Positions 40,520 through 63,746 of a stretch of DNA of 64,000 nt are shown here, in pieces. Position numbers and translations under genes: made by a program. Every line of letters starts with the position of its first letter. Within the stretch, counting starts at the first letter, position 1. The stretch spans positions 5,766,001-5,830,000 of the forward strand of contig CM068750.1 in NCBI GenBank assembly GCA_035084275.1, in the 5' to 3' direction. Origin of the DNA: Hydrolagus colliei. Lineage: Eukaryota. The notes below the pieces were generated by a model, which had not been told where the DNA came from, searched no databases, and worked only from the letters and a program-made list of their open reading frames with translations.

Positions 40520-41170
40520 CTTTTAAAATGGGGTTTACTTTTCCTGAGGCAGTGAACATTCTTGTGGGTGGTTTGATTCCAACATCAGTGGGTTGGCTCC
40601 CTTCACTCCTGGAGTTCCGAAGACTAAGGTTGTCTTTGACATGCACAGTTGAATGTTTATGAATGTGCACCAGGTTTGGTTAGAGACTTGGAAACCCTTT
40701 CCCGCTTAAAGTTTGTGAATTTGCATTTGCAGAACTGTACGTTTTCTGCATTGAAGCTCACACGTTCAGCCCGACTGTGGAGCAATCATTTGCAGTGGCC
40801 TTGCCTTTTGATGACAGCTCTGGATCAGCGATGAGTTTATTTGATGAAGACATTTCTCAAAAGCCAGACCTGCATCTGAGTTCCCCAACGTATCGAGTAC
40901 TTCTCTGAGGATCACTGCAATCCCTTTGACCTAAAGAAATGGCTTTGTCTGAGCCATTGTTCCTCTTTGTTTCTTCCTTTATGCTTCCAACCTCACCATC
41001 AGTTTCACCATCACTATCACTATAATTTCTCCCCAAGTAATATGAAAAATACCTGAGTTTTTCCCAGTGTATTCACACAATGTAAGGATCTCTGGCTGAT
41101 CAATTATTTCCTGTAGATCTTCTATCTGCTGACCTGATGATGGTTCATGGCATTGAAGCGATGTGACTTC
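40520..41170 (-). pseudogene. Large decayed exon candidate (YSDSDGETDGEVGSIKEETKR...) with three in-frame stops
   Basis: S/D/E/K-rich frame broken by TGA 40857, TGA 40758 and TAA 40680, all in the same frame; donor GTAATG. Confidence 0.42.
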
Positions 41171-42832
41171 CTTGAAGAAAGCAAACAGAATTAGTTGCCT
41201 TTTTTCAAGAAATTCCACATTCCTTTAATATATCACAACAGTTACACTTATTCCACATTTGTTCAGTATTTTATCTAACTGGAAGAAATAGTTTCTCTTC
41301 TAAATATATGCACTTGTCAGCTAGATATATACACACACACATATGTGAAATTATTGATTCATACATGGTATCAATATTCTTTTTTTAAAAAATCAATTAT
41401 ATTGATTTGGCATATTTAAAATATAAATATACTAGATATTTTGAATCTAGATAGAAGGCAGTAATAAATCTGTACACCCCATTCAGCGACTGCAGTTATG
41501 AATAATTTTAGTATTAAAACAGATTCCAATGGTGTTTGCTTGATACAATCACTGCTCAAGTTGTTTTGTGCACCATGCTTCCACTATCAGCAGCCAGGCC
41601 ATCATTAAGTAAAAGTACTGATTTACACTAACAACAATTTGCATTTATATAGCATCTCGGTGGTCTTAAAAGCTAAGCAAAATTACCCCACAATAGCATG
41701 AATTATTATTTCAAAGAAGATTTTAAAGTAACAAATAGCAACTGAAGCTGTTTTTAGAATTATTTATTGCCTCAACTTTATAATCTATGACCTCTAACCC
41801 ACTTTAAATTGTCCCTCTCCCAGACTGTCACGCCATTTCCTATGAGCAATATTCTCAAACTCCTGTGCTGATCAATGTCATTCTCTCTGCTTGTTCCCTT
41901 CTGGTCCATCACTATTTCTCCTAAGGCTCTATTTCTGCTGTCAATTTTACTCTCTCGGTTTCCTACTTGCCTTTATACTTTCACCAGTTTTTCGCTTGCA
42001 ATTCCTTGTCTTCTTTTTTGTAATATGGTGTATTTTCACCATATTACATTTCCCTTTGAATAGGGCCATTTAATCTGACTCTCTCTTCCACTGCATCTTG
42101 TGTCACTGCTCACTATTGTTTCTGTTACATGCAGAGTAACAATCCACTCACTCACCAGGGTCCCCAGTACTGTACTCCAGGTTGCTACTTCTTACTGTGT
42201 TGTACCACAGCTAGATTGTGCTTAAAATGCAGCTTGCTGATCTCTGGATTGAGGATTCTAGTTTTTTTGAAAATATATAATATTTTCTAAGTAAACAGTA
42301 TAGGTTTACTGTTGCGGCACAATACAAATCAATAGATTTGAGGAGTGGTTTGTCCCTGTGGCTTCGCACATGGTCAATTCCCTATAGCAAGAGATAAATA
42401 CTGTATTTGGCGAGCAAGACACATTAATGTTCCTTTTATCTCATAGCAGCCATTCATGAAGTAGTGTTGACAGAGGCTGGTGATGGCACATCGCTTATCC
42501 ATTATGCCATTCGGTGGTTAACTGAAAAATCACTAGTTCAGCAGCAATCAATGCTTATTTTAGTGGTATGGAATTATCATTATTGCAATAACACCTCTAG
42601 ATCTGGCACCTGAGAAGCTTTATTATTGGTGTAATAGTTTCTCCCAAAGCTAAGAAACGCTTGAAAAACTTTTTTTTAAACTAAAAGAATTTCCAGCCCA
42701 AGAAAGCCCAGAACGTGAAAATGACCTAGATCTTCCCATTCACTGTGCAAACAGACCACTTACATACATACCAGGCTGAATTTATTTATACTTCCTGACC
42801 ACAAGAACAGTAAAAACACATCAGATATTCAC

Positions 42833-43637
42833 TTGCTCAGAGAGTTTAACATTCTTTCGTTTAGCTGCAGTGGTTCTAGATTCAGAAAGGAGTGAGAAGT
42901 AGAACTGGAAAAGAATCTAAAACCGGCCACATTATCCAGGGAAAATGAACCAGTTGAACAGCTTTCCTCAGGAATTCTGTCAATATCATCAGGATTGTGA
43001 AAATTCTGCTGTCCTTCAGTTACATGGACATCGAATCTTGCGTTTACACTACCAGCATTTTCAGCTGAAGCAAAACAGACTGTAAAACTTAGCAACTCGA
43101 TCATTTTTAAAACATCTTTCTTAAACAGTTCTCAGTCGTGAAAGAAATGGCAGTGTGTGCTATTTTTCTGTCCTTAAGGTACTCTCCCAGTGATATTTAT
43201 AGATACTACAAGGCAATAATAAGAAGCTGTAAATTAGTTCAGGTTCTGTGAAAAGACATGAAACTATTAAATTGTCAGCTTCTTTGTTTAGCCTGTTCCT
43301 CCAGTGCCCAAACGGATTTATGGATTTATGCAATAATATTTTTTGTAATAACTTTACAAGCCTGCTATGGTTCAATCACAGACACTGTATGTGAAACATT
43401 ACGATATGTTACAGTCTACTGTACAGGATTACAGTCCTGTCTAAATTATGCCATGTAAAGTATTTGTCGTGGGGTGGGGTTGGGGGTGGGGTGGGTGGAG
43501 GAATAGGTATCACAGCTAAAATAGTACCTTTTAAAGTCATTTTTGACAGCAATTCCACAGCTATTGTATTGACTTGACCTATGCCTTGTTGATGGTCATC
43601 TAACTCAGTTTTTAGGAAATCCACTTTTTCTCTTCCC
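42833..43637 (-). pseudogene. Two candidate tail exons (43528-43637 and 42833-43064)
   Basis: Phase-compatible GT-AG open segments (GREKVDFLKTELDD...; ENAGSVNARFDV...). Confidence 0.45.
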
Positions 43638-43904
43638 CTGAAATGACATCCATTTGCATTTTCCATAAGAATTTGACAGCCACATTTCAACTACGATATT
43701 GAGTAAGGGATGTCTGGAATGAAACAGGAGAGGAGGGTTGATGATAAGTACTGCTGAAAACTCACAAAGTTCTTTCAGTCACAGCTAAATCCATTGAAAG
43801 GCTTTGATTACTCTCAAGAGCCTCCACTTGTTCAGCGAAGGATAAAACCAACGGGACATTGATAGCTTCCCGATCAAAACTCACTCCTATAATGAGGGAA
43901 GAGA

Positions 43905-44010
43905 CAACAACAACAACAACTTCGATTTATATAGCGCCCTCCACGCCAGACGGCGTCTCAGAGCGCTTCACAGTAGCGGATCCCGGGACCAAGCCAGGGG
44001 CAGGGGCAGA
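43905..44010 (-). mobile_element. L2 extreme 3' tail fragment
   Basis: (CAA)n CTTCGATTTATATAGCGCC...TCAGAGCGCTTCACA, matching the 38935 copy. Confidence 0.8.
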
Positions 44011-44034
44011 GACAAATTCCACTTGTTAATGCAG

Positions 44035-44337
44035 ATAATAATAATAATCATCCTTGCATTTGAAATTCTGCTTTTCAAATCTTCTAGACATCTCAAAGCG
44101 CTTCACAGAATTTGCTGTGAAGTGAATTCACCGTACATTTTGGTGGGCAAAACATGGCAGCCAATTGCACACAATAGATTGCCACAAACAGTCATGGATT
44201 AAATTGCCAATTTTTTTCTGGATTATTATTAAGCATGTGGAGTAAGGAAACTTGTCCAAGGTTTCGCCCGGCTGGGAATTAAACCCAGCTCTCTCACTTG
44301 TAAGGTGAGTGCTCTAAACACTGAGCTAAAGGACTCC
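44035..44337 (-). mobile_element. Same SINE family, full length
   Basis: Colinear with other copies. Confidence 0.88.
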
Positions 44338-46206
44338 TGGACTGAGGCTACAGGACAGAGCTAATAGCAGAGGGAACAGTCAGAAGGATGTTTTAGGAAT
44401 GCAAAATAAACATCCGTTTGTGTTATGAGCAGAATGTGTTTCTATAGTCACCTAGAGACTATAAGATCACAGTGTTGAATCCACAGTAACTGAAGTCAAT
44501 AACTAATGAGAAAGGCATATACTGTAAAATCTAGCCCTAGTCACTGAAACTTTCACACATCACAATAAAACTGCTTAACATTTACAACCAAAGATTTTTT
44601 TTAATATGCTTTTCATATTTTATTGTGGTTTAATACAGCAGACTGAACACAGCAAACTTGCAATTTACTGTACTTGCAACTATAGAGTTTTAGAAATCAT
44701 GATGATACAGGACTCCATTTGATTTTATATAAACTCTTATTAAGGGTATAATAAATTGGGTTTATAGGCTTTAAGGCATTTTTGGGAAGGACAGGATTCA
44801 GCAAAGCATTGACTGCCAATCTGAATCAAATTAATGGCCAAAGGCAGAAAGGACTGGGACAGGGACAGAAACACAGGATTGGTTAGGGACTAGGCACCAG
44901 GATTATGGGTATGAAATCAGGAACAGAGATAATGAAAATAGATCAGGACAGACAGTCAATTAAACTTGTTTTTGTTTCTATAGCTGGGAGGCTCTGTATT
45001 TTTAGAAGACCCATGAGGCCTGAAATTCCACTCGGTTTTAGGCTTGAAAATAATTTTACCTTAAAAAAGTTAGAATCGTGCCGAATTGTGAATAACTATT
45101 AAATTCTGGAATCCTGTTCATTTTTGGGGTGAAAAAAACAGATTCCAAATTGAAACCAAATATGATAACGTATTACCATTCACAACAAGCAAAGCCTTGG
45201 TAGAATATTCACCTTTCCAAATGTGTGACCAATGTATTAACCCTGAAGATCCCACATCAGATTTTGTCTCCTCTTTTATAAGTGCAATATCCATACTAAT
45301 CCAAAACTGGCTTCTCTCCGAATGCTTGAGATCAGATTGCAGTAAGTCTGGCTCAGTATCCTTACCTACTGGTATATTAGATTTATAAGCCGAAAAAGAA
45401 GCCATTTGGTCCATCACGTATGTACCCTTTACAAGAGTAATCCATTCAGTCCCATTTCGTGACTTTTCCCCATACCCCTACAATTTACTGCGGGTTAAAT
45501 ATCTGTCTGGTTCCCTATTGAAAGCTAAGATAGATTTTGTTTCTTTTGCTAATTATCTTGAAATAGGAGTTGGACTCTTTTAAACTCCTGATTACTGAAG
45601 ATTTCTCGATATGAGATATTCCTTATGATTAATTATTCCATGACTTTTACCTAAGGGCTACATGATCTTACAAACTTACATATTTTTATTTCTTTTGTAG
45701 TACTGACTACCTGATCTATTACTATAATCTTCTATGAACTAAAACCATTTCATAATTTAACAGAAAGAAAGATTCACAATGAAATGAAATCCTTTTTCCC
45801 CATTGCTCATATGTAATCACCCAAAGTAGGAGAAAGTATATATTTTGGAAAAAATGTGGTTATTACTAAACAGGAACATGTGTCAGGGCCAGACAAATTA
45901 TTTAATATTATGTGTAAATGCATTTACCTTTCAGAAATATTCAATCAACTTGACTGATCAGAGCAGCAAACACGTCTTATGTAAAATTATGTCCTCACTA
46001 CACAACACTCTTCAATTTATAATCTTAAATTATTTTATTCCATGTTTAACAAACAAATCTAATTTAATTGTTTGGCTCTACCATCAGACAAGTTTTATAA
46101 TGGACACTGCTGAGAGCCATCTCCAGGTGTCATGTGCAGCAAGGGAACCAGGGAATAGAAGAAAAAGTTTCAACTGCAACGAAAGGGGTAAAAAAAATCT
46201 GTTTAC

Positions 46207-46697
46207 CTTTCAGGGTGTATTGGGTGGGTTTAGTGTCAATGCATTTGTGATCTGAAGGTTGCTCATATATGGGGTTTGTTCTTGTTCGCTCTGGAACGTC
46301 CTGTGGCTGTTGTGCTTGTGCAGTGATGAAATTGTGTTTTCCACCATGATTGTCTGTTCCTTCCAGATCCTCATGTACCTTTTGTAGGGTTTCATCCAGA
46401 AACGAATGTTCCATCTCACACGAAAATCCATCTCTTAAAAGTGGTTGATATGAGACTTCTTGTGAATTCATCTTGATCTGCGCATGGTCAAACTTCAGAT
46501 GCAAATTCGTTTAAGGTATATGAATCGCTATCAAGCACCTGGCCTGAGCTGTATGATGAGATTTGTTTGTCCAGCTGGCCAGAATGAAGTAAGGAATATT
46601 GTGTGTCATCAGAGAAGACTGCAGTCTTTAACTGTAACTCATCTATATCAGGAGTGGAATCAGGCACCCTTAGATCAGACCCATCACCAGACCTATG
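46207..46697 (-). pseudogene. Large candidate exon of the disordered tail, with a frameshift
   Basis: 69 open codons from the acceptor end in TGA at 46488-46490; an overlapping second frame runs about 98 codons to the donor GTAAAC. Confidence 0.5.
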
Positions 46698-47167
46698 CTG
46701 TTAATAAATACAATTACATCTCCGCATCACAATCCCCCTAATAACTTCTAAACTACAAATTGATCATCTCAGAAGCAAAATTAAAATCTACAGTCTGATG
46801 TTTTCAAAAATAGTCTTATTGTCATAATATGTTTTTGGTAAATTTTGCATCAACCAGACAAATGTGAAGAATGCAAGCAAACTATACTGTTCCTTACTGC
46901 CAGTATATTTTAAATAGAAAGTTCATAGGTTTATTTACAATACAAGCAATTATATTTCTGATTTTGCTTCTGAGATGATCAGTATTAATGATTCAGTCTG
47001 TATCTCTGGGGACAGCTGTATTGTGCAGTTTCATGTAGTATAATTCTTCAGAACTGATCAGGCTACTGGCAGTACTATCTAAATGACAGACAGCTGAAGT
47101 TAGGTGCTGCTTGTACAACAAATGTCCCCATCCCCCCAGCAAAGAGATGATCAAGTGAACAGTTTAC

Positions 47168-47231
47168 CTCAACAACTTGCGGTATTTTGAAGATAAATTC
47201 TTCCAGGTCACTTTCTCCTGAACTAAAGCCA
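47168..47231 (-). pseudogene. Candidate exon (GFSSGESDLEEFIFKIPQVVE)
   Basis: Phase matches both neighbours; CAG/GTAAAC. Confidence 0.45.
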
Positions 47232-47419
47232 CTGCGTCAGGACAGTAGGTGTTGGACTTGGTGTAAATCTAGCTGAGGTGTGTTCCGACTCCCTGTATTG
47301 CAAGTCTTCAATCACTGCTTGATTTAAACTCATCAGCCACGCATGTGTACTGTTCTGCCTAGGAAACCTGAGTCATCAGAAACAGTTGAATAATAATCCT
47401 TGCATTTGATATAGAGCCG

Positions 47420-47710
47420 TTTAACAACAATTTGCATTTTTATAGCACGTAGTATCTTGGAGCATATTTACAATGGAATTTCACAGAATTCAGGGTAATG
47501 AATGTGTATTTCGGAGTTGAATGCAGCAGCCAATTTGCACACAGCCATGAAGTGAATGAACGATTTTCTCGGGGAGATTGTTGACAAGGACATAAGAAAC
47601 TCCCTTCTCCTTATGAACCGTGCCACCGGATCATTAAAGTCCCTCTGAACTGACAGCAATAATATATCCACATCATGCTGTCTCCACACAAAAGTTCCAC
47701 AACACAGTTC
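47420..47710 (-). mobile_element. Old Deu-domain-like SINE relic
   Basis: AACTCCCTTCTCCTT...GTGCCACCGGATCATTAAAGTCC resembles the recalled DeuSINE central domain. Confidence 0.45.
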
Positions 47711-48003
47711 AGCAATGTTTTGCTGGACAAGAACAATCGTAAGCCACTGGAATATTTGAAAGGGCAGGCTTCAATTATTTTTCAAGAGAAATACTCTTTC
47801 ATATATCTCTTAACCTTTGTCCATATTAAGGGTGATCAGTTACATAGAAAGAATCACAGTTGCCTGTTGTCTTGCTAAAGTCGTGGTTTTAGATTTTTTC
47901 CCGAAGAAGCTAAAAACACTACTGACCACAGATTGTCAAATACAAATTGTTAGTTACCATGTATGCGTTTATTTAACTGCAATAGAACATAATGAGTAAT
48001 TAC

Positions 48004-48115
48004 CTTGTAACTGATTCTGATTGCTGCATGTGAGCCACTGTTTCTCTCAGCAAACCAATAAAGATGCCTTGTGATATGGGATGACAGGTCTGGACAGATA
48101 ATGGTCTCTGTTCAC
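48004..48115 (-). pseudogene. AHCTF1: ELYS-like exon (EQRPLSVQTCHPISQGIFIGLLRETVAHM...)
   Basis: 112 nt; CAG/GTAATT; resembles RPKPLSA...RSVFINNVLSKIGEVW. Confidence 0.62.
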
Positions 48116-51100
48116 CTGCTAATTAAAACAAACGTTGAGCTTCTATTACAACAAGCCTCTGGATCTTGGCTATAAATTATACGTATTTTACTTATCAATA
48201 AATATACTTTGAGGCCATGACGCTAACATTAAAAAAGGATACAAAACAATATTGTGGAAACCAGCGAGATAAATTTCGAGGACCTTGGTTGACAAAGTAC
48301 TTGCACATGTACATGACTGAACCATTTAACGTGTCAATTACCAGGATTATTTCTGAGCACCCTTTGAATAGATGAAGCATTTCTATAAACTGGAAATATG
48401 TCATGTCATGTGGACCATAGATAATTCAGCAGTTGAATTAATACAAACTAATTCTGTACATCAATAAAGAATGAAAATAGGTTTTGTGTAACCACTCATT
48501 CTTTCGAACACAAATCAATAATCAACACTCAGGTGCAACGAGAAAAACAGTGAGACTTACTTGAACAATCATGGAACAATTTGGATCCATTTGATCCTTA
48601 AGATCTAATTTGAAAGCCAGTTTTGGAACATGGCAGAAATTCTACTTTGAAAAAAACAACAACGATTGATCCATTTTCGGGTATAGTTGAAGTCGAATTT
48701 TTCTCCCTCTTGTTATATGAATGGGAACAAATTCTATCCTCTATGTGGTTATCAAAGGACAATCAGAGCAACGGAAGCCATTACCCATTTCACACTGTGA
48801 AACCTGTCATTTGACACCGTAATGAGCACCAGCAGACATTCATTTTAAATTTACTGTTTTTCTTAAGGAAATTAATTTTCAAAATTTGCAGTAAAGCAAT
48901 GTAACCTACAATTGTCCTCAGCAATAAATGGCTCTCCTGCTTTGATTAAATATCTCAGAGTGGGTATTCCATCAACATTGGAAGCCGTTTATTGAATCCC
49001 GCACACCTGATAAGTCTGAGTCATCATTTAATCACACCTTACGGCCGGTTTCTGGTCTTTATTGCATTTAACCCTTTCCGACACCACGGAGCTCCGATGG
49101 AAAGCCAAAGCAACCTTGAAACAATTTGAGTAGCAAAATCGCTTTTACGTTTCCCACTCCCCCACCGCAATACTATTTTCATAACAAATCAATTGATAGC
49201 AGAAATGCTGCGCTGCTCGCAAATTTTTGACCAGCACTTAAAATTTATGAGTAACCCAACATTTATAGCATAATTTGATTCAGCACGAAAATGGTGTTAA
49301 AACAGTTTGCGGTTTCCACCGAGTGAAATTGATTCTGGTCTCGGGTCGTCTGTCTAATCCATTCTTCAGAAGATGCTTTCGAAGGGGAAAGTAACTTGCA
49401 ATCCGCTGCAGTATTAATAAAAATTCGATCCATAATTTACTGCCAGTACATTAATAATAAACAGAAGTTACACACTATTTACTATACAAGAATATATACA
49501 GTAAATTCACAGTATGTTCTGCGAAGTATTTTGTTAAGGCTCTACTCACTACTTTCCTCCCACAAGTGTTTTCCGAAAGGCCAGAAGTATTCTAACATTT
49601 TAAATTAACCATAACTTTTTTTTTTAATCTTTTTTTCCCCTAAATTATTTCACATACATTCTATGCATGAATGAATTGCAGGCCCCAATGTTTCCACTGC
49701 ACATAAGCTGGTGTGCCCATGTCTGTGGATCCAGCAAAATAATTTCACATAATTTGGTGCGAGCAAAAAGAATGTCCCCACTCACAAATCGATCTTGAGG
49801 TGGAAGATATATCGCATCGCTTCCAGCACCATAAATGGGGCATAAATCACTTTGATGCAAAACAGTTTTGCATCAAAGGTCAGTGTTTGTAAATTGGAGG
49901 ATAGAAGACAAAGAAGACTATAAGGAAATTCAAAAGCAGGAATGCAAGGCCAGCGAGAAATGATTAATTGTTATGGGTATAAATCTGAGTTAAAATTACT
50001 TTCAGAGAGCAGGAAATGGGACAATGAGTGGAAAGCAGTAGGCAGGAAGTTACTTTGAAAAAGTAGATGATGAAGGTTGAATCTTGCACCTATGATAATT
50101 TCTAATGTTAGAAGCAATTCACACGCCCTTTTATTAACATGCAGCTTTAGGTTGAGAATTATTAATTTTATACTTTTTTTTAATGCTCATTTAAATTGCA
50201 GCATTATGAGTGATAGAATGTGATATTTGTAAAGGTAATGAACTGTACAGATTTTGTATGTGTGTAATTCAATATAGATTTACAATATTATTTTGTATCA
50301 CAAGATTTGCTTATGAGGCAATAATGCACACTTCAATTGCACCTGAAGGGAATACTGAAGCACTTCTCATCTCATTTGAGGTGGTGTGTTAGAGGTGACC
50401 TTGTTTCCCATTTGAAAGGATTTGAATTTTAATCTTAGAACTTTTCTAAATGTTTAGACTAGGCTGAAATAGGAATACCATTCTTCACCTTATACTCGGT
50501 GCTGGTTCAGAACATAGTCATATACACATCACATTTATTTGTGCTCAGCTAGTTTCAAATCCAATACTGTACCAATAGCATAAATTCTTAATACAGTCAT
50601 ATCTTATGTTGCATTCTAATGTAGTTTGATACATAATTCATTTATCTTCGGATTTCCAAAGGTAACCAAAGGGTCAATGCTTGTTACCTAACCATTATGG
50701 TTAGTTATTCAATTCATCCTTTCCATTTGTTGCATACTTGTTGCATTTTTCCCAGTCATTGTCTGAAACAGGATCAGAGACTGCACTCTAACACAGGCAC
50801 TCGACAAGTTTCTGAAACTGTGGGGGAAAAAACAGCCTAGGTACAGAGTGGTTTGCAAGAAGCCACTTGTATTTGTATGGAAAGTGCAGAAATATTCAGC
50901 TAATCATGCACAGGTTACAGGAACTAAATAGGTCATTCTGATAACTTTCAACTCAACACTGAAACACTTAAAACATACTTGCATGGGATGTTACGAGATG
51001 GTCTTTGCATGTGAATTTGTTCAGAGTTGGTCAGTGGTGGGATGGAAGGCACGCCTTTCCAAATGTTTTCAGTTGGATGGATTTTTCTTACACATGTTAG

Positions 51101-52277
51101 GCTTGACCCTTTGCTCTGCATAAATTGCAAATATATTCTTGTAAGCGATGTGCGATACATTTATTAGAAAATATATATTTTAAAAAACAATGTATAACAA
51201 AAAGCAGAGCCTCTTGAGGCTGCAAATGCCCAGCTCTTTATTGGGCCCTCAGTAAGCTGAATATAGTAAACTGAATGTTATGTAATAAGTTGCTTCTAAG
51301 TTTGACTTTCAGACACAGAGTATTCTCAACAACATCACAAGAAAATTCCTCAACAAAAGAAGCAAGTTCCCCAAATAATTAGAAGGCACCAATTTGTTCA
51401 GAATTTTATATCCAGGAAAGGAAATTTTATTTACTGCGCTATTTTTTTATGCCCACTTTTTTGTTTGTGTCTCTCCATTGGGTATTCCCATCTGGAAATG
51501 CGTGGCAAGTAAGAGCACAGCTTTCTTCACAAAACTGTTGTTTCGTGGAGATAGGCTGCTGGTGAAGACCGATGAGGTGACTGTGGCCATTGATCACGCT
51601 GTGTGGCAGAGTTCAGGCTCCCAGCACTCTGTCTAAGCAGTCTGCCTCAAAAATTGATAGAAGCACTTTTAGTAATGGTGCGGCAGGCTGTAGAGCGATA
51701 CTTGTCGTTGTGAGCACATGTGAAGGAACTGCTATCTACTGTGTTATCAGTGATGTCTTCCTCTAACAGGGAGATGAGAAATACGGAGATCAGTAGCTTT
51801 CAACCCACGTTCCCACCCAATTCCAATTCTACAACAACTTGGATTTAGATTATGAAATTCAACTATTTGTAATGATTTTATAACTCTAATGTACTGCCGT
51901 ATTCTAACATATTTTGTGATGCAAGAAGCTGACACTGAATACAGTAATATATAATGACAGCAATAATAATCCAAGCATCTCATCACTTTGTCGAGCCTTC
52001 TCAAAGCGTCTCACAGGAGTGACTTTATCTGCATTTTATAATGACTTTTCAATCACAGAACACTTCAACATTAGATTTTTCTTCCCCGCTCTACAAATAA
52101 ATTTGGATGTGCATCAAAAAAAAAACGATGGGTTACACTGGCTGGATTTTAAAAGAATAAACCAATTTGAATAAAATATTTTAATACTTTAAAAGAATAA
52201 AATAATTTGAATGCATTTCCGACAACTTTCAAAAAAATGAGTAAACAGAGTTAATTAAAGAATATTCCAATAAATAC

Positions 52278-52421
52278 CAGTTTTTTTGCCCTGAAGGGCG
52301 AAATCAGCAGCTCCTTCAATAAACCCAGCTCCAAATAGCTTTCAAAAAAATCTCCAACCATTTCATCAATACAGTCTTCACACACTTGTCCCCTGAGCCA
52401 TGCCATGCCTCTGTAATGCAC
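52278..52421 (-). pseudogene. AHCTF1: ELYS-domain exon with 1-nt deletion (CITEAW/WLRGQVCEDCIDEMVGDFFESYLELGLLKELLISPF)
   Basis: 144 nt where a phase 2 to 0 exon needs 3n+1; resembles CMVEAWNFLRQ...EMGLMEDLLKLPF. Confidence 0.8.
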
Positions 52422-53078: not shown

Positions 53079-53269
53079 CTGTTGTGAAGCAGCACAGCGA
53101 TATGTAACTTGCGCTCCTCCAGATTTGCTGGTCTCATAAACTGAATGTATAATGTATTTGAGTGCACCTTGAAACTCTTCAACAATGCTTTAGTAATGCA
53201 CGCTGGATGCCATGGAAGCCAGGACCTGACCAGTAGCAAGGACGGATGAAGTAGCACATCTAACACAGC
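53079..53269 (-). pseudogene. AHCTF1: ELYS-domain exon (AVLDVLLHP...YIQFMRP...LHIAVLLHN)
   Basis: 191 nt; CAG/GTAGGC; resembles GLDLLFHP...YIQTMKP...LHLTVLLFNR. Confidence 0.82.
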
Positions 53270-53559
53270 CTGCAATACAGTACGATTTTTTTTTCTACAC
53301 GCTTTTCAGTATGGCCACTTTTGTGGAGTCCTGCAGTTCAGCGGTTAGAGCACTTAACTTATAAGCGAGAGACCTGGGTTCAATTCCAGACAGGGTGAAA
53401 CCTTGAGGGCCACCCACAGGTACAGCATTTAGATATCACAAATATTTTACCTACAGTGTAGGTGATAGCATAAGGTAAAAGATCTATTAATCACTTGTCA
53501 GTGGCAATATTTACTTTCAGAGGTAAAATGATCGCAAGTTTTCTGAAATGCAAGCCTAC

Positions 53560-53680
53560 CTTCAAGCTGGGTGGTGGATAAACCCACCCACTAGCACTGT
53601 GTCCATCCCACAGAAAGTCCTGTTTCTTTGCTAGATGTTCCACCATTGCATCTATCATTAATCCAGCGTGGTTCCATTTC
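53560..53680 (-). pseudogene. AHCTF1: ELYS-domain exon (KWNHAGLMIDAMVEHL...GWVYPPPSLK)
   Basis: 121 nt; CAG/GTAGGC; LMID and YPP ELYS motifs. Confidence 0.82.
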
Positions 53681-54791
53681 CTGCCGTAATTATTACAAAA
53701 CATCAGACCTGATGAACAGGGATTCAAAAAGCAAGTCTCTATATGGTGAAGATCCTTATTAAAAGATTGCACGATGATTCTCAAACCATCCGCACGCTAG
53801 TTAGTGCTAATAAAGCAAACAAAAAACTTGTCCCAATTGCTTTCTGTGACACTCTGTATAATGTTGATCTATTGCCAACCATATCTTTGAAATTCTGCTG
53901 CATTCATACTGACCTGAAAAAAACATATTTTAACATTTAACAATGAATAAACAACATTGTTGAACTATTTTGCATTAATAATGCGCCCAATAACAGAATT
54001 TACAGCAGTTTTCAGGAAGAGGTCCAATATGGAAGCACCATCTTACTACTCGGGCGAGCTTTATATGTTGCTCAATGCTCTGACAATGAGTAGTTTATTG
54101 CACAATGTGCCTGTACCCAAGTACAGTATACAGTATGCTCCACTTCACCACTATTCATCTACAAGACGCCTTCAGAATTTCCTCATTTGTCTCAAAAAAT
54201 ACTTTCCAGTGAACAGTACAATATGCAAAATCTATTATTAATACTGTGACACAAAACTCAGTTACGTTAACGTATATTAATGTTCCCATTTCCTACATGT
54301 TGTAAAATGTTCCATCACCGTCACGGACCATCACAGTGCAAAAGTACAAAAGGGCAATAATTCTCTCAAATTGCTTCTTTGCATAAGTGTAACTTCTCTA
54401 TGACCCTTTTTGCAGCTTCCAGAACTGATACTGTGAAGTGACAAACTGGTCCATTGCAGTTATGTGATATGCCATTATTTTAACAACAAATTACAATTAC
54501 TTAGTGGCTTTCACGTCGGGAGGACGTCCCAAGGCACTGGGATTATTAATTTTAAGCACAGTTCACCTGATTCTTTTTTGAGCTGAGTACGATGTTCAAG
54601 AACCTTAATGACTGCAGCAACATTTCTCAATACTTTTTCCTGTTTTATTATGTATTGAAGGGTTTGTTGGTCTAGAAATATCCACAAGTCTGTCTAACAG
54701 CTAAAACCTGAAATGCATTGAAAAGCAACTCAAATGTTTCCTTCCTTTTCATGTCCAATTCACAAATCATTTATAATATTAAAAACAAGTA

Positions 54792-56932: not shown

Positions 56933-57015
56933 ACAATTTTTATTATTATAAATTCATTGACCATTAATTATGCATATTTACGTGCTCTCCCTTAACATCA
57001 TAATGATGTACTCAC

Positions 57016-57623: not shown

Positions 57624-57714
57624 CTTCTTCTGTAAATTTTTTAATCCAATCAATTATCACGTCGATGTTGTCATTCCTCAAAAAGCGTGTCAAAATATCT
57701 TCCACTGCTTCCTC
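57624..57714 (-). pseudogene. AHCTF1: ELYS-like exon (EEAVEDILTRFLRNDNIDVIIDWIKKFTEE)
   Basis: 91 nt; CAG/GTAAGG; matches length and pattern of EEQLEAILSAAIQ...YIRRWITEE. Confidence 0.72.
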
Positions 57715-57983
57715 CTGAAAGAACAACGGCAAAACAATCAACGCTGAGGTGTGAATATGAGGTGTGAATATATTCCTACAGAGTGAAGATCAGGGCACTT
57801 TCCTAAATTTTTCACTTGGTCTTCGTTTTGCCTGCCTCACCTCGCAAACATTTTCTTAATAAAAAAGGGTTTCACTGAAAATTCTAAAGTCACAAATACC
57901 AGACACAATTCCGCTCCTGGGAGGCCACTGGTCCTGAGCAGTTTGTATTGGTTTTAAGCTTCCTGGCTCATGGCAGTGGAGTG

Positions 57984-58311
57984 ATAATAATAATAATAAT
58001 AATTCTTGCAATTGATGTAGTGCTATTCACATCTTCTAGATGTCTCAAAGCGCTTCACAGTATATACTGTAAAGTGAATTGACGGTACTGTATGTATGTG
58101 GGCAAAATACGGCAGCCAATTGCGCACAGCAGTGTCCCACAAAGGGTCATGGATTGAAATGATCAATTTATTATTGGGGTTTTTGGGTCGGGGGGATTAT
58201 TATTAGACGTGTGGAGCAAGGAAACTTGCCCAAGGTTTCGCCATGCCTAGAATTTAACCCAGGTCTCTCACGTGTAAGGCAAGTGCTCTAACCACTGAGC
58301 TACAGGACTCC
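57984..58311 (-). mobile_element. Same SINE family, full length
   Basis: Colinear with other copies. Confidence 0.9.
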
Positions 58312-61300
58312 ACATGATGTGGAAAGTTTGTAAAGTTTCTGCAAATCAAGCTTGAAAAATAACAATCCAACTATCATGAGCTCAAAGTTCTGCCATGTAC
58401 ATGAACATAACAAAAATACTATTGCCAGCACATGTGGATCCCCAGAGTGAGAAACTATAATGAATGAAGAAACAAAACAGTCGAAAAAGGCCAACTCTTT
58501 CCCCTGATGAAGTCTAACTTAATCGCTTTCCAGTGACAAACACTGTCACTTTCATCATGGAAATCATCTGATTTGTCTACAAATAGACCAGATATACAAC
58601 TCTTTATCTGACAGTTAAGAAATTAATTCAATTTACTCTCCCTTCCCCCCACTCCCCGCCCGCCCCCACCCCAAACTCCAGGTTGTCAGAACAAAAATAA
58701 CTGATGCCTTTCTCTGAATAATCATTAATTCAATGCAAAGAATTTTTCAAACAATGCTTCAAATTGCACACTTGGGTGTGTTTTGCAACCAGAATTACTT
58801 TACATTTCAATAGCCAGCGCCGCTGTAGCATGGCATTATCAGGCCTGAGCCTCAAACAGATCTATTCATGTGGAGCACATCCAGACCTGGACGAGAATCT
58901 CTTCCACGGTATGTGACAGATTCCAGAAATACTCTACAGATGGAAGAGATGAAACAGCTCGAGGCTGTCATGTTACTCACATCTACTCGAGGCCGGGGCT
59001 GATGTTTTGGCAGGCTTCCAGGGTGCTGAAGAGCATCAGACAATCTGCCCCAATGTACCCATCAATCCCCACTTAGAAGTGACCTGTTAGAGCAAAGATA
59101 AAATTTATTTCAACTCGATACAAATTAGAGTAAACAAAACAATGTGTTAGAGGCATAAGGTAAAAGTTTACCCGCTTGCTAATTCCGACGAATGTGCTGT
59201 GGTGTATTCCATTTTCAAGTAACATCCAGACATCTTTAAAAGCAGACAAAAATAAAGGCAAATTAATGTATGATACCTGCTCCACACGTAAACACTGTTA
59301 TTTTATTGAAGGTACAGTTTTTCAAACCACAAATAACAGAGTAATTTGTTTTTATAGCACATTACCTTATGAAAACACAGTGATAGCTTTGCTGTGTACA
59401 TCTGTTACTACAATGAAATGCTCTATGCAGGTTAAAAAAAAATACATACCGAGCATATAATGGCCCAGTGAATGGTCTGGTTGTGTTGAAGGGTCTGCTT
59501 GATGCTTTGTTCAGAAAAGGCTTTTATGAATCACAACATCAAGTATGTTCACATCACAAGCCTCATTCCTTTCAAAGTACAGTGCCCAAATACCAAAATA
59601 TGAACAGTCTTCCAACTTCTCATTTGATCTAGAAGACATAAGCAATACAGGCAAGCTATTCACATCTGACTAAAAGATTGCACATGTTTGAAAATTAAAA
59701 TACTCAGCCGCACTAAGGTTCTGTGATAATGTATGCTCATATTTATTTCATTTATGAAGTACAGGTACAGTACTTTGTTTTCTGTAAATATCAATAAGGT
59801 CCATGAGGCAGGCATGATTTAGTATTTACGTGCTAAATAAACACTGATGCAGTCAACTCAAGTAAATCTCCTCAACAAAGGTACACAATTTCAAAATGCT
59901 AAAGTAATTGCTAATGTGGAGAATTCCATGTCGACATATACAACATTCCCTAATCTATGCACTAGTGGGTGGGCCAATAACAGCCTGTAAAAGATTATAA
60001 TTTACATAAATTGAGCATCTGAAGTTTGATTTTAGGCGTGTGGAGTAAGGAAACTTGCCCAAGGTTCCGCCCTGACCTGCCTGGATTCGAACACAGGTCT
60101 CACACTTGTAAGGCGAGTTCTCTAATCACTGAGCTACAGGACTCCACAAAAGATGAGATGTCTGTGAATCCCCTAACCTATGCATAAACTCACTGGCAAA
60201 ACAGGGACAGTTTAGCAGATTCCTGATGGGCACATTAAACTGCACGTCCACTTATCACCTTTTCTCAAGGGTTCAGTAAACGCCTGGAATACAGAATTTA
60301 CCTTAATGAACTAGGTCTGTCTTCTCATAGCCACTGGTCAATGTGAAATAAGGCCAAGTAGGTAAATGATTCCACATCTTTAACTTCCCAAGTAAATACA
60401 GCCAGGCTATTCGGGGCTGAGCATCTGGCTAAAATGAAAGAGAGAGACAGGCTAAATCAATGTATTTTTCAATATACATGAATTCATCCAGTGATATGTT
60501 ATACACAAGCTGGGATATCCCTGCATAATATACAGTTGAATCATTCTCAACGTCACTGTCCCATCAAGTCATGCGGTGCAATATAATTACGCGTATGTTT
60601 ATATTTATTTTCAATTGCAAGAGCCTGCTGCCTGTCACTGTCTGTCATCACAAGCTCACCAACACAAACAAAACTGGTAAAAACAGCAAACAGAAAGAGG
60701 TGGCGTTCCTTAAAATGGGATTAATGCCATATTATGATAAAGAATAAACACGCTATGTTTCAAGCCAGCTATATATCTTAGGATTTAAATAGTATTGAAC
60801 TATCCAAACTGTGCTCTTATCTCTTGTATAATCTCTTCAGACCTTCAATGCGCGAGGGTCCTCTGCTGGTTACTGTATCTGAATAACTCATGTCTGGCAA
60901 TTAGTTATTTAGCCTGTAATTTAGTCTCATTCATTGGCTGGTAGAGCAAACTTGTCAGAAAGCCCAAACAAATTTGAGACTGCAAAGTGCTGTCCCACAT
61001 TTTCAGCACAAGATTATAGATTGAATTTTTTTTGTTTGTTTCATTCTTCCACGAAACACACTCTCCACTATGTATAGCAAGTGGTAAATGAACATCTATC
61101 TCCTGTACAATTCACCATTCTGTATTTCTCCTCCACTTATGCTTTTATACCCCACACGGACTGCTTTTGCTTTGGCAAGTAGATTCTTTTACACATCTAC
61201 AACAAGAACAACAAAATTACATTTATAGTTACCAACAAACACAAGCTTCCTTATCTTCTCTTCCCCCACCTGTGTGCCTACTCACCCACACTAGGCCACG

Positions 61301-62158
61301 TCCTGCGTGTCTGTAGGAAGGAACTGTGCCCTGTTCTCATTCTGCAAGGAAATCCCATCATTTTCAACTGATGATTGATAGTGAGTGACCAAGACAGAAT
61401 ATTATAATCTATGATCTGCCTTTCTACACCCTGGGTAATTATCCTACACTCTCCTCTGTACACCCTGGGTAATTATGAGAGTACTCCCATTGGCTGCCAT
61501 GTTTCGCCCACAAATATACAATCAATTGATTTTACAGTATATTCCGTGAAGTGGTTTTAGACGTCTAGAAGACCTGAAAAGCGCGATATCAAAGGTAAGG
61601 ATTATTATTAAGATTCAAACCATATATACACCAGTGACAGTGCACAAAAGACAACAATGGCAGTGGAGATGAAAAATAAATAGAGAAATCATAAAGAAAT
61701 GATTAGGTAATGTGGGGCAAACAGAATGCTGTCGGGAGCAAATTCTGAAGAATATCTTCACCGCAAGACAGACCTGTCACTTACAACTGCATCAATTATG
61801 AGTTACCAGCTCAGTCCACTTGTTAAATAGTCTTCCTGTTACGACTACACCTTCAGCACAGCGTGAGCTGGATGCTGAACTGCGTAAACAGAAACCATCC
61901 TTTAAATCCCATTTTAATGAAAATGTAACATAAGAGCTCTAAGCAAAATGTTGTGATATGATATGAATTATCACTAATTGGGCAGGATGAATTATCCGAT
62001 CCCCTGGCTGAACAGGGTCAGTAATCAGATCACACAGACCTCCAAGTGTGCTTCCCAACCAATTCTTTTTATTTGTTTGCGTCAGTGTTTGTTTATTTAT
62101 TTTTTAATTGAGTTTTGTTTCAACCGTGTTGCCAATGGTACGTGCTCTGGCAGCTTAC

Positions 62159-62273
62159 TTTGACAGTTCTCTATGATGCGACAGTTCAGTAGGCGGCAGC
62201 TGGAGGCTGAGGCGTTGTGTACAACTCCATCGCATAACTGTTGCGTGTAACATATGTGACAGCGAAGAAAACC
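62159..62273 (-). pseudogene. ELYS-like exon candidate
   Basis: Strong polypyrimidine acceptor and GTAAGC donor; reading frame ambiguous. Confidence 0.4.
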
Positions 62274-62560
62274 CTGGAAACAGGAAAAACATCCAAGTAG
62301 GCAACACCCGATTAAAAACTGAATGCTGAGACTGAAAAAGAGATTAAATACAGCGGCAAGAATGGGTGATTGCTGCCACCTATTGATGACGTGGATTCAT
62401 TGCATGGCCATGGCTATAGGAATGCACTTGTTCTCTGCACCAAACTAAGATAACTATTTGAACAAAGGGCTTAGTGTAGGTTGATCACACAGACTCGGGA
62501 TTATTTCTGTGGGTGGTACTGCCTTTTGCCTGACAATCTCAGTATAAGCTCCATACATAC

Positions 62561-62714
62561 CCGGGCAGCAGTGAAATATAATCTGCCTCTAAACTGTCAA
62601 TGTTGCCTTTCTGAATGTCAATCACTTCTTTAATGTGATAGAGACTCTCCTCTCCTCCACCCCTTCCCATTATTACCTGTCTTTGTTGTTTAAATAAAAT
62701 ATTGTCATTTAATC
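62561..62714 (-). pseudogene. ELYS-like exon candidate (…QVIMGRGGGEESLYHIKEVIDI…LLP)
   Basis: Donor GTATGT; weak resemblance to QVNIYGQGKPSVYLGLFDI; acceptor uncertain (62714 or 62676). Confidence 0.45.
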
Positions 62715-62965
62715 CTTTTTTAACAAATGATAACAAGGTTTATCCTGTGAAGCACTTTGAAGCAAGATAAGGCACTATATCAAATGCGAGGATTATTATT
62801 GTCTATAATGGGCAAGCATGTAATAACATTTTATGATTCATTCAGGAGGACAACTTCCAGAACTGACTTGAGGCTTCTGCAGGAAATCTGAAGATATAAT
62901 GGACATTTTTCATTTCTATTTATTCTTTACTCGTCAAAATAATGAACCGCAGCTTCTTCAGAATG

Positions 62966-63309
62966 AATAATAATCCTTGCGTTTGGTATAGCGCCTTTCA
63001 CATCTTCTAGACATCTCAAAGCGCTTCACAGAATATACCATATAGTGAATCAGCTGTATATTTGTGGGAGAAATGCGGCAGCCAATTGCGCACAGCAGCG
63101 TCCCACAAACAGTCGCGGATTGAAATTACCAATTTATTATTGGGGGGGTTTTCTTGAAGGATTATTATCAGGCATGTAGAGTAACAAAACTTGCTCAAGA
63201 TCTATCTTAGATCTTGCTCAAGATCTATCTTAAAATAACCCTGCCCGGAATTGAACCCAGGTCTCTCACTTGCAAGGCAAATGCTCTAACCACTGAGCTA
63301 CAGGACTCC
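62966..63309 (-). mobile_element. Same SINE family, with an internal tandem duplication (CTTGCTCAAGATCTATCTTA x2)
   Basis: Colinear. Further fragments near 17015, 18610, 28680, 31127, 37292, 53325, 55600, 60030, 61490 and 62745. Confidence 0.88.
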
Positions 63310-63667
63310 ACGTGTAGTGATCAATATCACATTAGATTGCTGCGGTATTCACTGCATAAAGTGGTCAATTTATTTACGGGGGATTTCAGTGCAAAATGTG
63401 GCGCCTTTTCATCTCTTGAACGGAGACCTCATCCTCATCACAATGAAAGACATTTCTGGTCATTTCACGGTTGCGTTCTTGAACGATAAATGGAAAGCGA
63501 CAATAACAGGAAGCCACTGTGCAAATAGATAGCCTTGTAAACGATCTGGCTCTGTTGCCTTAATGGTGCTTTGTAAAGTGGTCATGATATTGTTCCTTGT
63601 AATAATTTTAGGCAGAAATCTTTGGGATACAGTACTTCTAAACAGAAGATAAGCAGTTGAAACTTAC

Positions 63668-63746
63668 TTGATAAATGACTTCAGCATTGTTGTCTTGCTG
63701 TTGAAATCCAAACTGAAGGAGATTTAACTCAATAGATGCTCCTTCA
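63668..63746 (-). pseudogene. AHCTF1: ELYS-like exon (EGASIELNLLQFGFQQQDNNAEVIYQ), beta-propeller region
   Basis: CAG/GTAAGT; resembles ELYS EGDVLSLHLLQLAFG...QILYE. Confidence 0.7.

What the first reader, a model, noticed from the sequence alone, without database searches (positions are those of the whole stretch)
40520..63746. A second, highly divergent ELYS/AHCTF1-like gene, apparently decayed in place
Seen: at least seven GT-AG exons in the order expected for ELYS, covering the beta-propeller, helical/ELYS domain and tail. Known: AHCTF1 is normally a single-copy, well-conserved gene that seeds post-mitotic nuclear pore assembly. Inference: this copy is too divergent to be the working ortholog, and it has introns, so it is not a retrocopy. 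Many amino-acid changes, few disablements and intact splice sites suggest a paralog (possibly a whole-genome-duplication ohnolog) that evolved as a protein for a long time and was lost late. An intact 'ELYS2' nucleoporin may therefore survive in related lineages.
Basis: partly seen in the sequence, partly recalled or inferred. Interest (0 to 1): 0.85.

Follow-up and report, generated by a model that had tools for sequence, protein, structure and literature searches.

The report
Decayed second ELYS nucleoporin gene
This stretch holds the broken remains of a very divergent extra copy of the nuclear-pore assembly gene ELYS, whose counterpart in the elephant shark still reads as protein over the part on record, so some cartilaginous fishes may carry a second ELYS lineage that nobody has described.

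Summary
An intron-containing ELYS/AHCTF1-like gene lies on the minus strand. The beta-propeller exons are supported by Pfam ELYS-bb (E=0.00093 and 0.042) and by solved ELYS chains (best E=0.0011). The ELYS-domain exons match a 219-aa Callorhinchus milii protein, UniProt A0A4W3JH21 (tblastn 1e-27, 4e-23, 2e-14). That protein scores 8.9e-31 on Pfam ELYS but is only about 34% identical to human ELYS.

The window copy is broken:
- Two in-frame TGA codons sit in propeller exons (not checked in reads).
- A 201-nt ELYS-domain exon is absent.
- One exon carries a compensated -4/+7 frameshift.
- Another carries a 1-nt deletion.
- A SINE abuts a further exon.

Contigs of two samples of the same organism reproduce the lesions inside the 6-kb stretch laid, so those are not assembly slips. 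A sister species keeps the frame at the 1-nt deletion but shares the exon loss. Its exons differ from the window's as much as introns do.

Not verified: the tail, a canonical AHCTF1 elsewhere in this genome, and the age of the duplication. The scan noted this same stretch once more (s1-903820), and nothing on other DNA.

The parts
63668..63746 (-). Exon E1 (79 nt; EGASIELNLLQFGFQQQDNNAEVIYQ), beta-propeller, about ELYS residue 300
   Evidence: AG/GT borders and phase 0 end. ELYS assignment rests only on my recollection of human ELYS. Pfam gave no ELYS hit for 63641-63784.
62159..62273 (-). Exon E2 (115 nt; GFLRCHICYTQQLCDGVV...IIENCQ), beta-propeller
   Evidence: Pfam ELYS-bb profile 312-362, E=0.042, 12.9 bits, on fragment 62100-62396. 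AG/GT borders; phase fits E1 and E3.
60302..60428 (-). Exon E3 (127 nt) with in-frame TGA at 60327-60325
   Evidence: AG/GT borders with a strong AAG|GTAAAT donor; phases fit E2 and E4. No Pfam or solved-structure hit. ELYS assignment by recollection only. Not covered by the reads call.
59450..59628 (-). Exon E4 (179 nt) with in-frame TGA at 59513-59511
   Evidence: Pfam ELYS-bb 415-452, E=0.00093. Solved structures: 4 of 4 hits are ELYS, mouse 4i0o E=0.0011, human 415-452. The stop lies 3 codons after the aligned part. Phases fit E3 and E5. Not covered by the reads call.
59172..59233 (-). Exon E5 (62 nt; VWMLLENGIHHSTFVGISKR)
   Evidence: AG/GT borders; phases fit E4 and E6. No Pfam hit. Assignment by recollection.
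58313..58503 (-). Exon E6 (open frame GKELAFFDCF...NFELMIVGLLFFKLDLQKLYKLSTS). Its 3' end runs straight into a SINE and no good in-phase donor is left.
   Evidence: No Pfam hit. Assignment by recollection; the damage to the donor is an inference.
57985..58312 (-). tRNA-derived SINE copy with (ATT)n tail, inserted at or in the 3' end of E6
   Evidence: Repeat families D1-D6 and sequence. The flanks look like a decayed target-site duplication (by eye).
57624..57714 (-). Exon E7 (91 nt; EEAVEDILTRFLRNDNIDVIIDWIKKFTEE), helical region
   Evidence: AG/GT borders. No hit in Pfam or solved structures. Assignment by recollection. X1 and X5 contigs are identical here.
54604..54671 (-). Exon E9 (alternative donor at 54567)
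   Evidence: No hit. Assignment by recollection. Phase fits E10 with the donor at 54604.
54004..54079 (-). Exon E10 (SIEQHIKLARVVRWCFHIGPLPENC)
   Evidence: No ELYS hit. Assignment by recollection. Three differences from organism B, giving 2 changed codons.
53853..53913 (-). Exon E11 (alternative donor at 53828)
   Evidence: No hit. Assignment by recollection. Phase fits E10 and E12 with the donor at 53853.
53560..53680 (-). Exon E12 (121 nt; KWNHAGLMIDAMVEHLAKKQDFLWDGHSASGWVYPPPSLK), start of the ELYS domain
   Evidence: tblastn with P0001 residues 1-33, 2e-14. Human ELYS 716-759, E=0.14. Three of 3 differences from organism B change the residue.
53270..53559 (-). Intron of 290 nt where a 201-nt phase-0/0 exon (P0001 residues 34-100, human ELYS about 757-824) is absent. 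It holds a head-only SINE fragment at 53318-53405.
   Evidence: No tblastn trace of P0001 34-100 anywhere in the window. Human and Xenopus ELYS have this segment. SINE arm. X1 and X5 contigs cover 52001-53349 and 53378-54531 without gaps. Organism B is collinear over 53035-53356 and 53505-53780.
53079..53269 (-). Exon E14 (191 nt). A stretch of about 12 codons is read out of the ancestral frame between about 53184 and 53144, inferred as 4 nt lost and 7 nt duplicated (net +3).
   Evidence: tblastn with P0001 101-163, 1e-27, with the middle scrambled. The other frame reads EEFQGALKYI, matching P0001. The same state is in X1, X5 and organism B, with 0 gaps.
52278..52421 (-). Exon E15 (144 nt) with a 1-nt deletion between 52400 and 52399, leading to a stop at 52318-52316
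   Evidence: P0001 163-170 matches in one frame and 172-219 in another (4e-23). X1 and X5 have no gap there. Organism B has one extra base behind 52399, which restores the frame (table 4).
40509..52010 (-). Putative further helical exon (about 51990-51880) and tail. Open pieces lie at 46133-46700, 45121-45477, 42832-43131, 40860-41072 and 40509-40679.
   Evidence: Only open frames rich in S/D/E. No Pfam hit. No AT-hook-like motif. Not verified as ELYS.
12592..16381 (-). Neighbour, not part of the gene: intact kinesin motor exons downstream on the same strand
   Evidence: Pfam Kinesin, profile 51-127, 137-214, 219-267 and 266-301, E from 1.5e-20 to 7.5e-10, collinear.

Best explanation
This is a pseudogene: the decaying copy of a highly divergent, intron-containing paralog of the nucleoporin gene ELYS/AHCTF1.

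It is orthologous to the Callorhinchus milii locus that encodes UniProt A0A4W3JH21. The source organism is therefore probably a holocephalan or another close relative of C. milii. That is an inference, because run organisms were coded.

It lies head-to-tail upstream of an intact kinesin gene.

In this organism it can no longer make an ELYS-like protein. Its lesions are:
- two premature stops in the propeller;
- loss of a 67-residue exon from the core of the ELYS domain;
- about 12 ELYS-domain residues read out of frame;
- a frameshift in the next exon;
- a SINE at the end of another exon.

Inferred order of events:
1. The copy evolved as a protein for a long time. The C. milii copy is open and recognisable as ELYS.
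2. It lost constraint before the split of this organism from its sister species. They share the exon loss and the scrambled segment, and their exons differ as much as introns.
3. It kept collecting lesions afterwards. The 1-nt deletion is private to this organism.

It has no present function. A working ELYS must be encoded elsewhere in the genome.
For: Identity:
- A phmmer search of 1.84 billion representatives with exon 53081-53269 found P0001 (95 bits, 81% identity). P0001 is UniProt A0A4W3JH21, 'ELYS-like domain-containing protein', C. milii.
- P0001 scores 8.9e-31 on Pfam ELYS. It matches human ELYS 724-935 at 5.4e-29 and Xenopus ELYS at 2.8e-29.
- tblastn of P0001 on the window gives 1e-27, 4e-23 and 2e-14.
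- Propeller.

Divergence:
- I counted 72 identical of 212 aligned positions between P0001 and human ELYS.
- Human and Xenopus share 67 of 102 positions in the first block of the same output.

Lesions:
- P0001 residues 34-100 are absent from the window.
- There is a frame switch inside E14 and another inside E15.
- In-frame TGA codons sit in E3 and E4, within a five-junction phase-compatible exon chain.

Not assembly slips:
- The X1 contig over 52001-53349 has 0 differences and 0 gaps.
- The X5 contig (other sample, other study) has 3 differences and 0 gaps.

Relaxed constraint:
- Organism B differs at 7 listed sites in 474 exon bases, against 43 in 2316 bases overall.
- In the tool-verified exon E12, 3 of 3 differences change the residue.
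- The window has lost residues that are invariant in human, Xenopus and C. milii: G in MIDG and C in ESCLELG.

Contrast: the neighbouring kinesin exons each hit Pfam at 1e-10 to 1e-20.
Against: - No canonical AHCTF1 was shown elsewhere in this genome. 'Paralog' rests on the argument that a disabled ELYS cannot be the only one.
- The two TGA codons lie outside the stretch laid on reads, so they are unverified in independent data.
- E3's extent rests on splice phase and recollection only. A weak in-phase donor upstream of its stop would skip the stop.
- The exon loss and the -4/+7 change both preserve the frame. The sister species also keeps the frame at 52400, so a shortened protein in relatives is not excluded.
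- The A-versus-B counts are tiny, and table 3 printed only 40 of 191 differences.
- Exon E8 could not be placed.
- The C. milii model is only 219 aa and ends in read-through intron, so that copy may be broken outside the model.
Confidence: 0.8

Rival explanations
1. Ancient origin. The copy is an ohnolog from the early vertebrate genome duplications, duplicated together with its kinesin neighbour. It was retained only in holocephalans (or cartilaginous fishes) and lost everywhere else. This is a refinement of the best explanation about age, not about present state.
For: P0001 is equally far from human and Xenopus ELYS (104.6 and 105.5 bits) and about half as similar as those two are to each other. 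A kinesin gene lies directly downstream on the same strand. Earlier notes place TMEM179/NRAC next to it (s1-902543, unchecked). From memory, canonical AHCTF1 lies beside KIF28 in mammals, and TMEM179/NRAC lie in the human 14q32 region, which is paralogous to 1q44.
Against: No tree was built, because no canonical cartilaginous-fish ELYS was in hand. The synteny rests on unchecked notes and on recollection. Fast evolution after a recent duplication gives the same distances. The representatives search found no other relative of this exon at E<=0.001 (1 of 3 hits real), so no shark, ray or bony-fish 'ELYS2' is on record at that sensitivity.
Confidence: 0.4
2. Recent origin. A lineage-specific segmental duplication of AHCTF1 (with the kinesin) in holocephalans, followed by rapid divergence under relaxed constraint and then decay.
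For: The only relative found is from C. milii. The window copy evolves neutrally between sister species.
Against: The C. milii copy keeps an open frame and a strong ELYS-domain profile match (107.9 bits) despite about 34% identity. That suggests long evolution as a protein rather than quick decay. The kinesin neighbour is intact and well conserved.
Confidence: 0.35
3. Still working. The locus makes a shortened or alternatively spliced ELYS-like protein or a regulatory transcript, at least in the sister species. The 'lesions' are tolerated changes.
For: The exon loss is phase 0/0 and the -4/+7 change nets +3, so both keep the frame. Organism B keeps the frame at 52400. An in-phase cryptic donor could skip the E3 stop. 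All 9 delimited exons keep AG..GT.
Against: The E4 stop has no in-phase donor before it. The 1-nt deletion is fixed in both samples of this organism. 67 residues of the domain core and conserved residues are gone. There is no sign of purifying selection between A and B. No RNA run holds the stretch, which is weak evidence.
Confidence: 0.08
4. It is the organism's only AHCTF1, and the damage is assembly error.
For: None beyond the fact that a second AHCTF1 was not shown here.
Against: Contigs assembled independently from two samples in two studies carry the same indel states over 52001-54531. From established knowledge, ELYS is essential in mouse, zebrafish and C. elegans.
Confidence: 0.02

Closest known systems
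Vertebrate ELYS/AHCTF1 (human chain 7r5j_T0, Xenopus 7vci_T, mouse N-terminal domain 4i0o_A)
   Same: Same order of parts: beta-propeller exons, then helical exons, then the ELYS domain. Window 59514-59669 aligns to human 415-452 and 53560-53680 to human 716-759. Via P0001, the three ELYS-domain exons still present in the window fall within human ELYS 724-935.
   Different: About 34% identity in the ELYS domain, where human and Xenopus have about 66%. The copy is disabled by stops, a frameshift and exon loss. No AT-hook-like motif was found. It lies beside a kinesin and, by unchecked notes, TMEM179/NRAC.
Callorhinchus milii 'ELYS-like domain-containing protein', UniProt A0A4W3JH21 (P0001, 219 aa)
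   Same: Ortholog of the window's ELYS-domain exons, at 80-88% identity per exon. Even the intron read-through at its end matches, stop included.
   Different: The C. milii model is open through four exons. It includes the 67-residue exon that the window lacks, and it has neither the -4/+7 change nor the 1-nt deletion.
Duplicated (non-processed) pseudogenes in general. From memory, human AHCTF1P1 is a processed AHCTF1 pseudogene and human KIF28P is a unitary pseudogene.
   Same: A gene relic with stops, frameshifts, repeat insertion and neutral substitution.
   Different: It keeps its introns and splice sites, so it is not a retrocopy. Its parent is not the canonical gene of today but a long-diverged sister copy.

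Membership tests
ELYS/AHCTF1 nucleoporin family | N-terminal seven-bladed beta-propeller (Pfam ELYS-bb, PF16687) | tested here: inconclusive
   Two of the 30 ELYS-region fragments hit ELYS-bb in collinear order: E=0.042 and E=0.00093. Both are below the 25.8-bit gathering score. In the solved-structure search, 4 of 4 hits are ELYS for one exon. That search found no ELYS for 62100-62396 or 60328-60456. Only the last ~190 residues of the propeller are in the window.
ELYS/AHCTF1 nucleoporin family | ELYS helical domain (Pfam ELYS, PF13934) | tested here: inconclusive
   Directly on the window pieces: 0 of 3 hit. Through the ortholog P0001: met, 107.9 bits against a cut-off of 28.8. The window's version lacks 67 of about 210 domain residues and has about 12 more out of frame.
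ELYS/AHCTF1 nucleoporin family | Disordered C-terminal tail with AT-hook or basic chromatin-binding region (metazoan ELYS) | tested here: not met
   No [KR]G[RK]P-type motif on the minus strand between 17000 and 53000; the motif itself was recalled. S/D/E-rich open pieces exist but cannot be tied to ELYS.
ELYS/AHCTF1 nucleoporin family | One uninterrupted reading frame | tested here: not met
   TGA at 60327-60325 and at 59513-59511. Frameshift at 52400/52399, giving a stop at 52318-52316. The frameshift is confirmed in two samples.
Duplicated (unprocessed) pseudogene | Introns kept, disabling lesions, no purifying selection | tested here: met
   Nine of 9 exons have AG..GT. Lesions are as listed above. 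Between sister species, exons differ at 7 of 474 bases against 43 of 2316 overall, and 3 of 3 changes in E12 alter the residue. The sample is small.
Duplicated (unprocessed) pseudogene | A working parent or sister gene elsewhere in the same genome | not testable with these tools
   No tool here searches this genome. A search of the scan's notes for AHCTF1, ELYS and nucleoporin returned only this stretch.
Ohnolog of the early vertebrate genome duplications | Branches outside all jawed-vertebrate AHCTF1 in a gene tree, and lies in a paralogous chromosome block | not tested
   No canonical ELYS sequences could be obtained, because of the length window of the search for homologous proteins and the single representatives job. 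Synteny rests only on unchecked notes and the kinesin neighbour.

The most novel reading that the evidence does not exclude
ELYS2 is an ancient ohnolog of AHCTF1, duplicated together with a KIF28-like kinesin in the early vertebrate genome duplications. It survives as a working, perhaps tissue-restricted (for example germline), second nuclear-pore seeding factor in Callorhinchus. It died only recently in the window's lineage. If so, holocephalans would show a natural before-and-after series for the loss of a nucleoporin paralog.
Probability: 0.25. Interest if true: 0.7.

Novelty: new member of a known kind. Interest (0 to 1): 0.5.

Why it matters
To my knowledge ELYS is treated as a single-copy gene in animals, and it seeds nuclear pores on chromatin after mitosis. 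The full-text searches I ran found no report of a vertebrate ELYS paralog. A second, long-diverged ELYS lineage in cartilaginous fishes, open in one species over the part on record and freshly decayed in another, would bear on two matters. It would add a case to the record of which duplicates from the early genome duplications were kept and for how long. If the C. milii copy works, it would offer a natural variant of the ELYS domain to test for Nup107-160 binding. As it stands in this window, it is a dead gene of mainly evolutionary interest.

Tried and rejected
Searches that gave nothing for ELYS:
1. Pfam on the three ELYS-domain pieces of the window: no hit.
2. Pfam on 28 of the 30 ELYS-region fragments overall: no ELYS family.
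3. Solved-structure searches with 9 window fragments. ELYS appeared for 2. It did not appear for 7.
4. The search for homologous proteins, three searches:
   - the 76-aa exon fragment gave nothing;
   - P0001 found only itself;
   - a kinesin exon gave unnamed kinesin fragments of no use for naming or baseline.
   The length window of that tool hides full-length ELYS, so these blanks mean little.
5. In the representatives search, 2 of the 3 hits (P0002, P0003) are low-complexity repeat proteins. I dropped them as spurious after reading them.
6. The Atlas search only repeated that P0001 is of the ELYS family.

My own readings that I corrected:
7. I first read the E15 lesion as a 5-nt tandem duplication. 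The extra base in organism B and P0001 show that it is a 1-nt deletion.
8. I first placed E2's acceptor at 62333 and suspected several frameshifts. The acceptor at 62274/62273 gives a clean exon that fits the Pfam hit and both neighbours.
9. I considered fragments 60908-61111 and 61795-61938 as exons and dropped them. They have no hit and are not needed by the phase chain.

Left unresolved:
10. Exon E8 (candidate at about 57400-57290) could not be threaded in phase between E7 and E9.
11. For E9 and E11 two donors each are possible. I report the phase-compatible ones.
12. Tail: no AT-hook-like motif was found.
13. Papers: three searches gave listings only. In one review, PMC7764596, I searched for passages on paralogs, duplication, orthologs and single copy. 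The only match was a cited title about other genes. I asked for no supplements, and none bears on a claim here.

Full report
WHAT IS THERE. The finding lies in a vertebrate-type region with about 38% G+C, no N and many SINE copies. The gene is on the minus strand, so it runs from 63746 down. Six-frame reading and sequence inspection gave a chain of small exons. Nine of them were delimited exactly:
- E1 63746-63668
- E2 62273-62159
- E3 60428-60302
- E4 59628-59450
- E5 59233-59172
- E7 57714-57624
- E12 53680-53560
- E14 53269-53079
- E15 52421-52278

All nine have AG before and GT after. The codon phases at E1/E2, E2/E3, E3/E4, E4/E5 and E5/E6 all fit. Further exons are proposed from open frames, splice sites and my recollection of human ELYS only: E6 58503-~58313, E9 54671-54604, E10 54079-54004 and E11 53913-53853. 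One expected exon (E8) could not be placed.

IS IT ELYS? Direct evidence is thin, because the copy is very divergent.
- Pfam: 30 fragments of the region were scanned. Two hit ELYS-bb, in the right order. Fragment 62100-62396 hit profile 312-362 at E=0.042. Fragment 59514-59669 hit profile 415-452 at E=0.00093. Both are under the gathering score. None hit the ELYS-domain model.
- Solved structures: nine fragments were searched. Two found ELYS. Fragment 59514-59669 gave four hits, all ELYS (mouse 4i0o 0.0011, 7tbl 0.0011, human 0.017 at residues 415-452, Xenopus 0.39). Fragment 53494-53796 gave human ELYS 716-759 at E=0.14 as the second-best hit. The other seven found none.

- The best hit was P0001: 95 bits, 81% identity, 219 aa.
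- The other two hits are low-complexity repeat proteins, and I discarded them.
- P0001 is UniProt A0A4W3JH21, 'ELYS-like domain-containing protein' of Callorhinchus milii.
- It scores 107.9 bits (E=8.9e-31) on Pfam ELYS.
- It aligns to human ELYS 724-935 at 5.4e-29 and to Xenopus ELYS 722-932 at 2.8e-29.
- tblastn of P0001 on the window gives 1e-27 (E14), 4e-23 (E15) and 2e-14 (E12).
- The last nine residues of P0001 are intron read-through. They still match the window's read-through, up to the same stop. The two are therefore the same locus in two species.

HOW DIVERGENT. Counting the match lines by eye, P0001 shares 72 of 212 aligned positions with human ELYS, about 34%. In the first block of the same output, human and Xenopus ELYS share 67 of 102, about 66%. 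P0001 is equally distant from both (104.6 and 105.5 bits). For a slowly evolving cartilaginous fish, this is not what an ortholog of AHCTF1 should look like. Without a canonical cartilaginous-fish ELYS in hand, this remains an argument and not a tree.

THE LESIONS.
(a) Missing exon. P0001 residues 34-100 form one exon of 201 nt in phase 0/0. They correspond to about human 757-824 and are present in human and Xenopus. They have no counterpart anywhere in the window. The intron between E12 and E14 is only 290 nt and holds a head-only SINE fragment at 53318-53405.
(b) Scrambled stretch in E14. The main frame reads KSFKVHSNTLY where P0001 has NEEVQGALKY. The other frame reads EEFQGALKYI. This fits 4 nt lost near 53184-53180 and a 7-nt tandem duplication at 53150-53144, for a net +3. 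The indel sizes are inferred from the protein comparison.
(c) Frameshift in E15. P0001 163-170 matches one frame and 172-219 another. The shifted frame stops at 52318-52316.
(d) E4 carries an in-frame TGA at 59513-59511, three codons after the part aligned to ELYS 415-452. No in-phase donor precedes it.
(e) E3 carries an in-frame TGA at 60327-60325. Its extent rests on the strong donor at 60302 and on the phase fit to E2 and E4. A weak in-phase donor upstream could skip the stop.
(f) E6 runs into a full SINE (58312-57985). No good in-phase donor is left. This is an inference.

ARE THE LESIONS REAL, AND HOW OLD? Sequencing runs holding the stretch were found under coded names. Contigs of four runs were laid on 52001-58000.
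- Organism A, sample S1 (X1): contigs cover 52001-53349 and 53378-54531 with 0 differences and 0 gaps.
- Organism A, another sample and study (X5): the same spans have 3 and 1 differences and 0 gaps.

Lesions (a), (b) and (c) are therefore not assembly slips. X1 may be the assembly's own data; X5 is independent. For organism B (X6, about 1.9% different, 43 of 2316 bases over the eight contigs listed), three results matter:
- It has one extra base behind 52399. That restores the frame of E15, reading ...EAWHRLRGQV... (my translation).
- It shows no gaps over 53035-53356, so it shares lesion (b).
- It is collinear on both sides of the short intron, so it very probably shares lesion (a).

CONSTRAINT. 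In the exons covered by organism B's contigs (E10, E11, E12, E14; 474 nt), 7 substitutions are listed, about 1.5%. That is the same as the surrounding non-coding DNA.
- In E12, the tool-verified exon, all 3 change the residue (S>G, A>G, A>G).
- One of these shows that the window has lost the G of MIDG. Organism B, C. milii, human and Xenopus all keep it.
- In E10, the 3 substitutions change 2 codons.
- In E11, the 1 substitution is silent.

The numbers are small, and table 3 printed only 40 of 191 differences. They still give no sign of purifying selection. Over the longer span to C. milii the exons are 80-92% identical in protein. The C. milii copy keeps frame and domain signature, which suggests real constraint for much of that time.

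SURROUNDINGS. Downstream on the same strand, kinesin motor exons at 16381-12592 hit Pfam Kinesin collinearly at 1.5e-20 to 7.5e-10, with no lesion seen. That is a sharp contrast with the ELYS-like exons. Earlier notes of this scan call this kinesin KIF28-like and place TMEM179/NRAC beyond it. I confirmed only that it is a kinesin. From memory, canonical AHCTF1 sits next to KIF28 in mammals, and TMEM179/NRAC sit in the human 14q32 block that is paralogous to 1q44. If both hold, this locus is the sister block's copy of an AHCTF1-KIF28 pair, that is, an old ohnolog. This is a lead, not a result.

TAIL. Below 52278 there are open, S/D/E-rich pieces on the minus strand. They have no Pfam hit and no AT-hook-like motif. 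I cannot say that they belong to the gene, nor where it ends.

VERDICT.
- It overstates the copy's intactness.
- It leaves the key points open: another AHCTF1 in this genome, the age of the duplication, and the integrity of the C. milii gene.

No paper in the searchable library mentions a vertebrate ELYS paralog. The C. milii fragment is in UniProt, but only under a domain-derived name.

Noticed in passing
window 57985-58334, 62966-63332, 44043-44360; partial copies at 60078-60168, 56181-56386, 61489-61615, 53318-53405: A tRNA-derived SINE family with an (ATT)n-type tail, present in at least seven copies in 24 kb. In the Logan contigs of all four runs, summed depth over these parts reaches 10^5 to nearly 10^7, so it is an extremely abundant repeat in organisms A, B and C.
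   Followed up: partly
window 12592-16827, minus strand (gene continues towards 1): Intact kinesin motor exons (Pfam Kinesin, E from 1.5e-20 to 7.5e-10). Further open pieces at 9559-9813, 8550-8735 and 7292-7456 look like coiled-coil and FHA-type parts of a kinesin-3. Earlier notes call it KIF28-like.
   Followed up: partly
window 53144-53184: Two indels 30 nt apart (inferred -4 and +7) cancel to +3, leaving 12 residues read out of the ancestral frame with no stop. The state is shared with the sister species. It may be chance (one in three) or a trace of selection to stay in frame.
   Followed up: partly
window 38956-39540 (minus) and 10340-10696 (plus): Two copies of a long open frame with the same peptide pattern (…[14 protein letters not shown]…LWNSLP…), apparently a repeat-borne coding remnant. 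The opposite strands are open as well.
   Followed up: no
window 54921-54991 and 55379-55449: A 71-nt direct repeat, 85% alike, 458 nt apart, inside the long intron. Both arms lie in very high-depth repeat sequence.
   Followed up: no
P0002 (1243 aa) and P0003 (329 aa): Tandem-repeat, low-complexity proteins scored E=2.7e-13 and 9.8e-05 against a 63-residue exon, through 14 and 5 matched stretches. This shows how such proteins can pass as hits in the representatives search.
   Followed up: yes
window 52691, 52982, 53991: Sites where the second sample of organism A (X5) differs from the window. At 52691 and 53991 it agrees with organism B, and at 52691 also with C. These are probably polymorphisms within organism A.
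   Followed up: no
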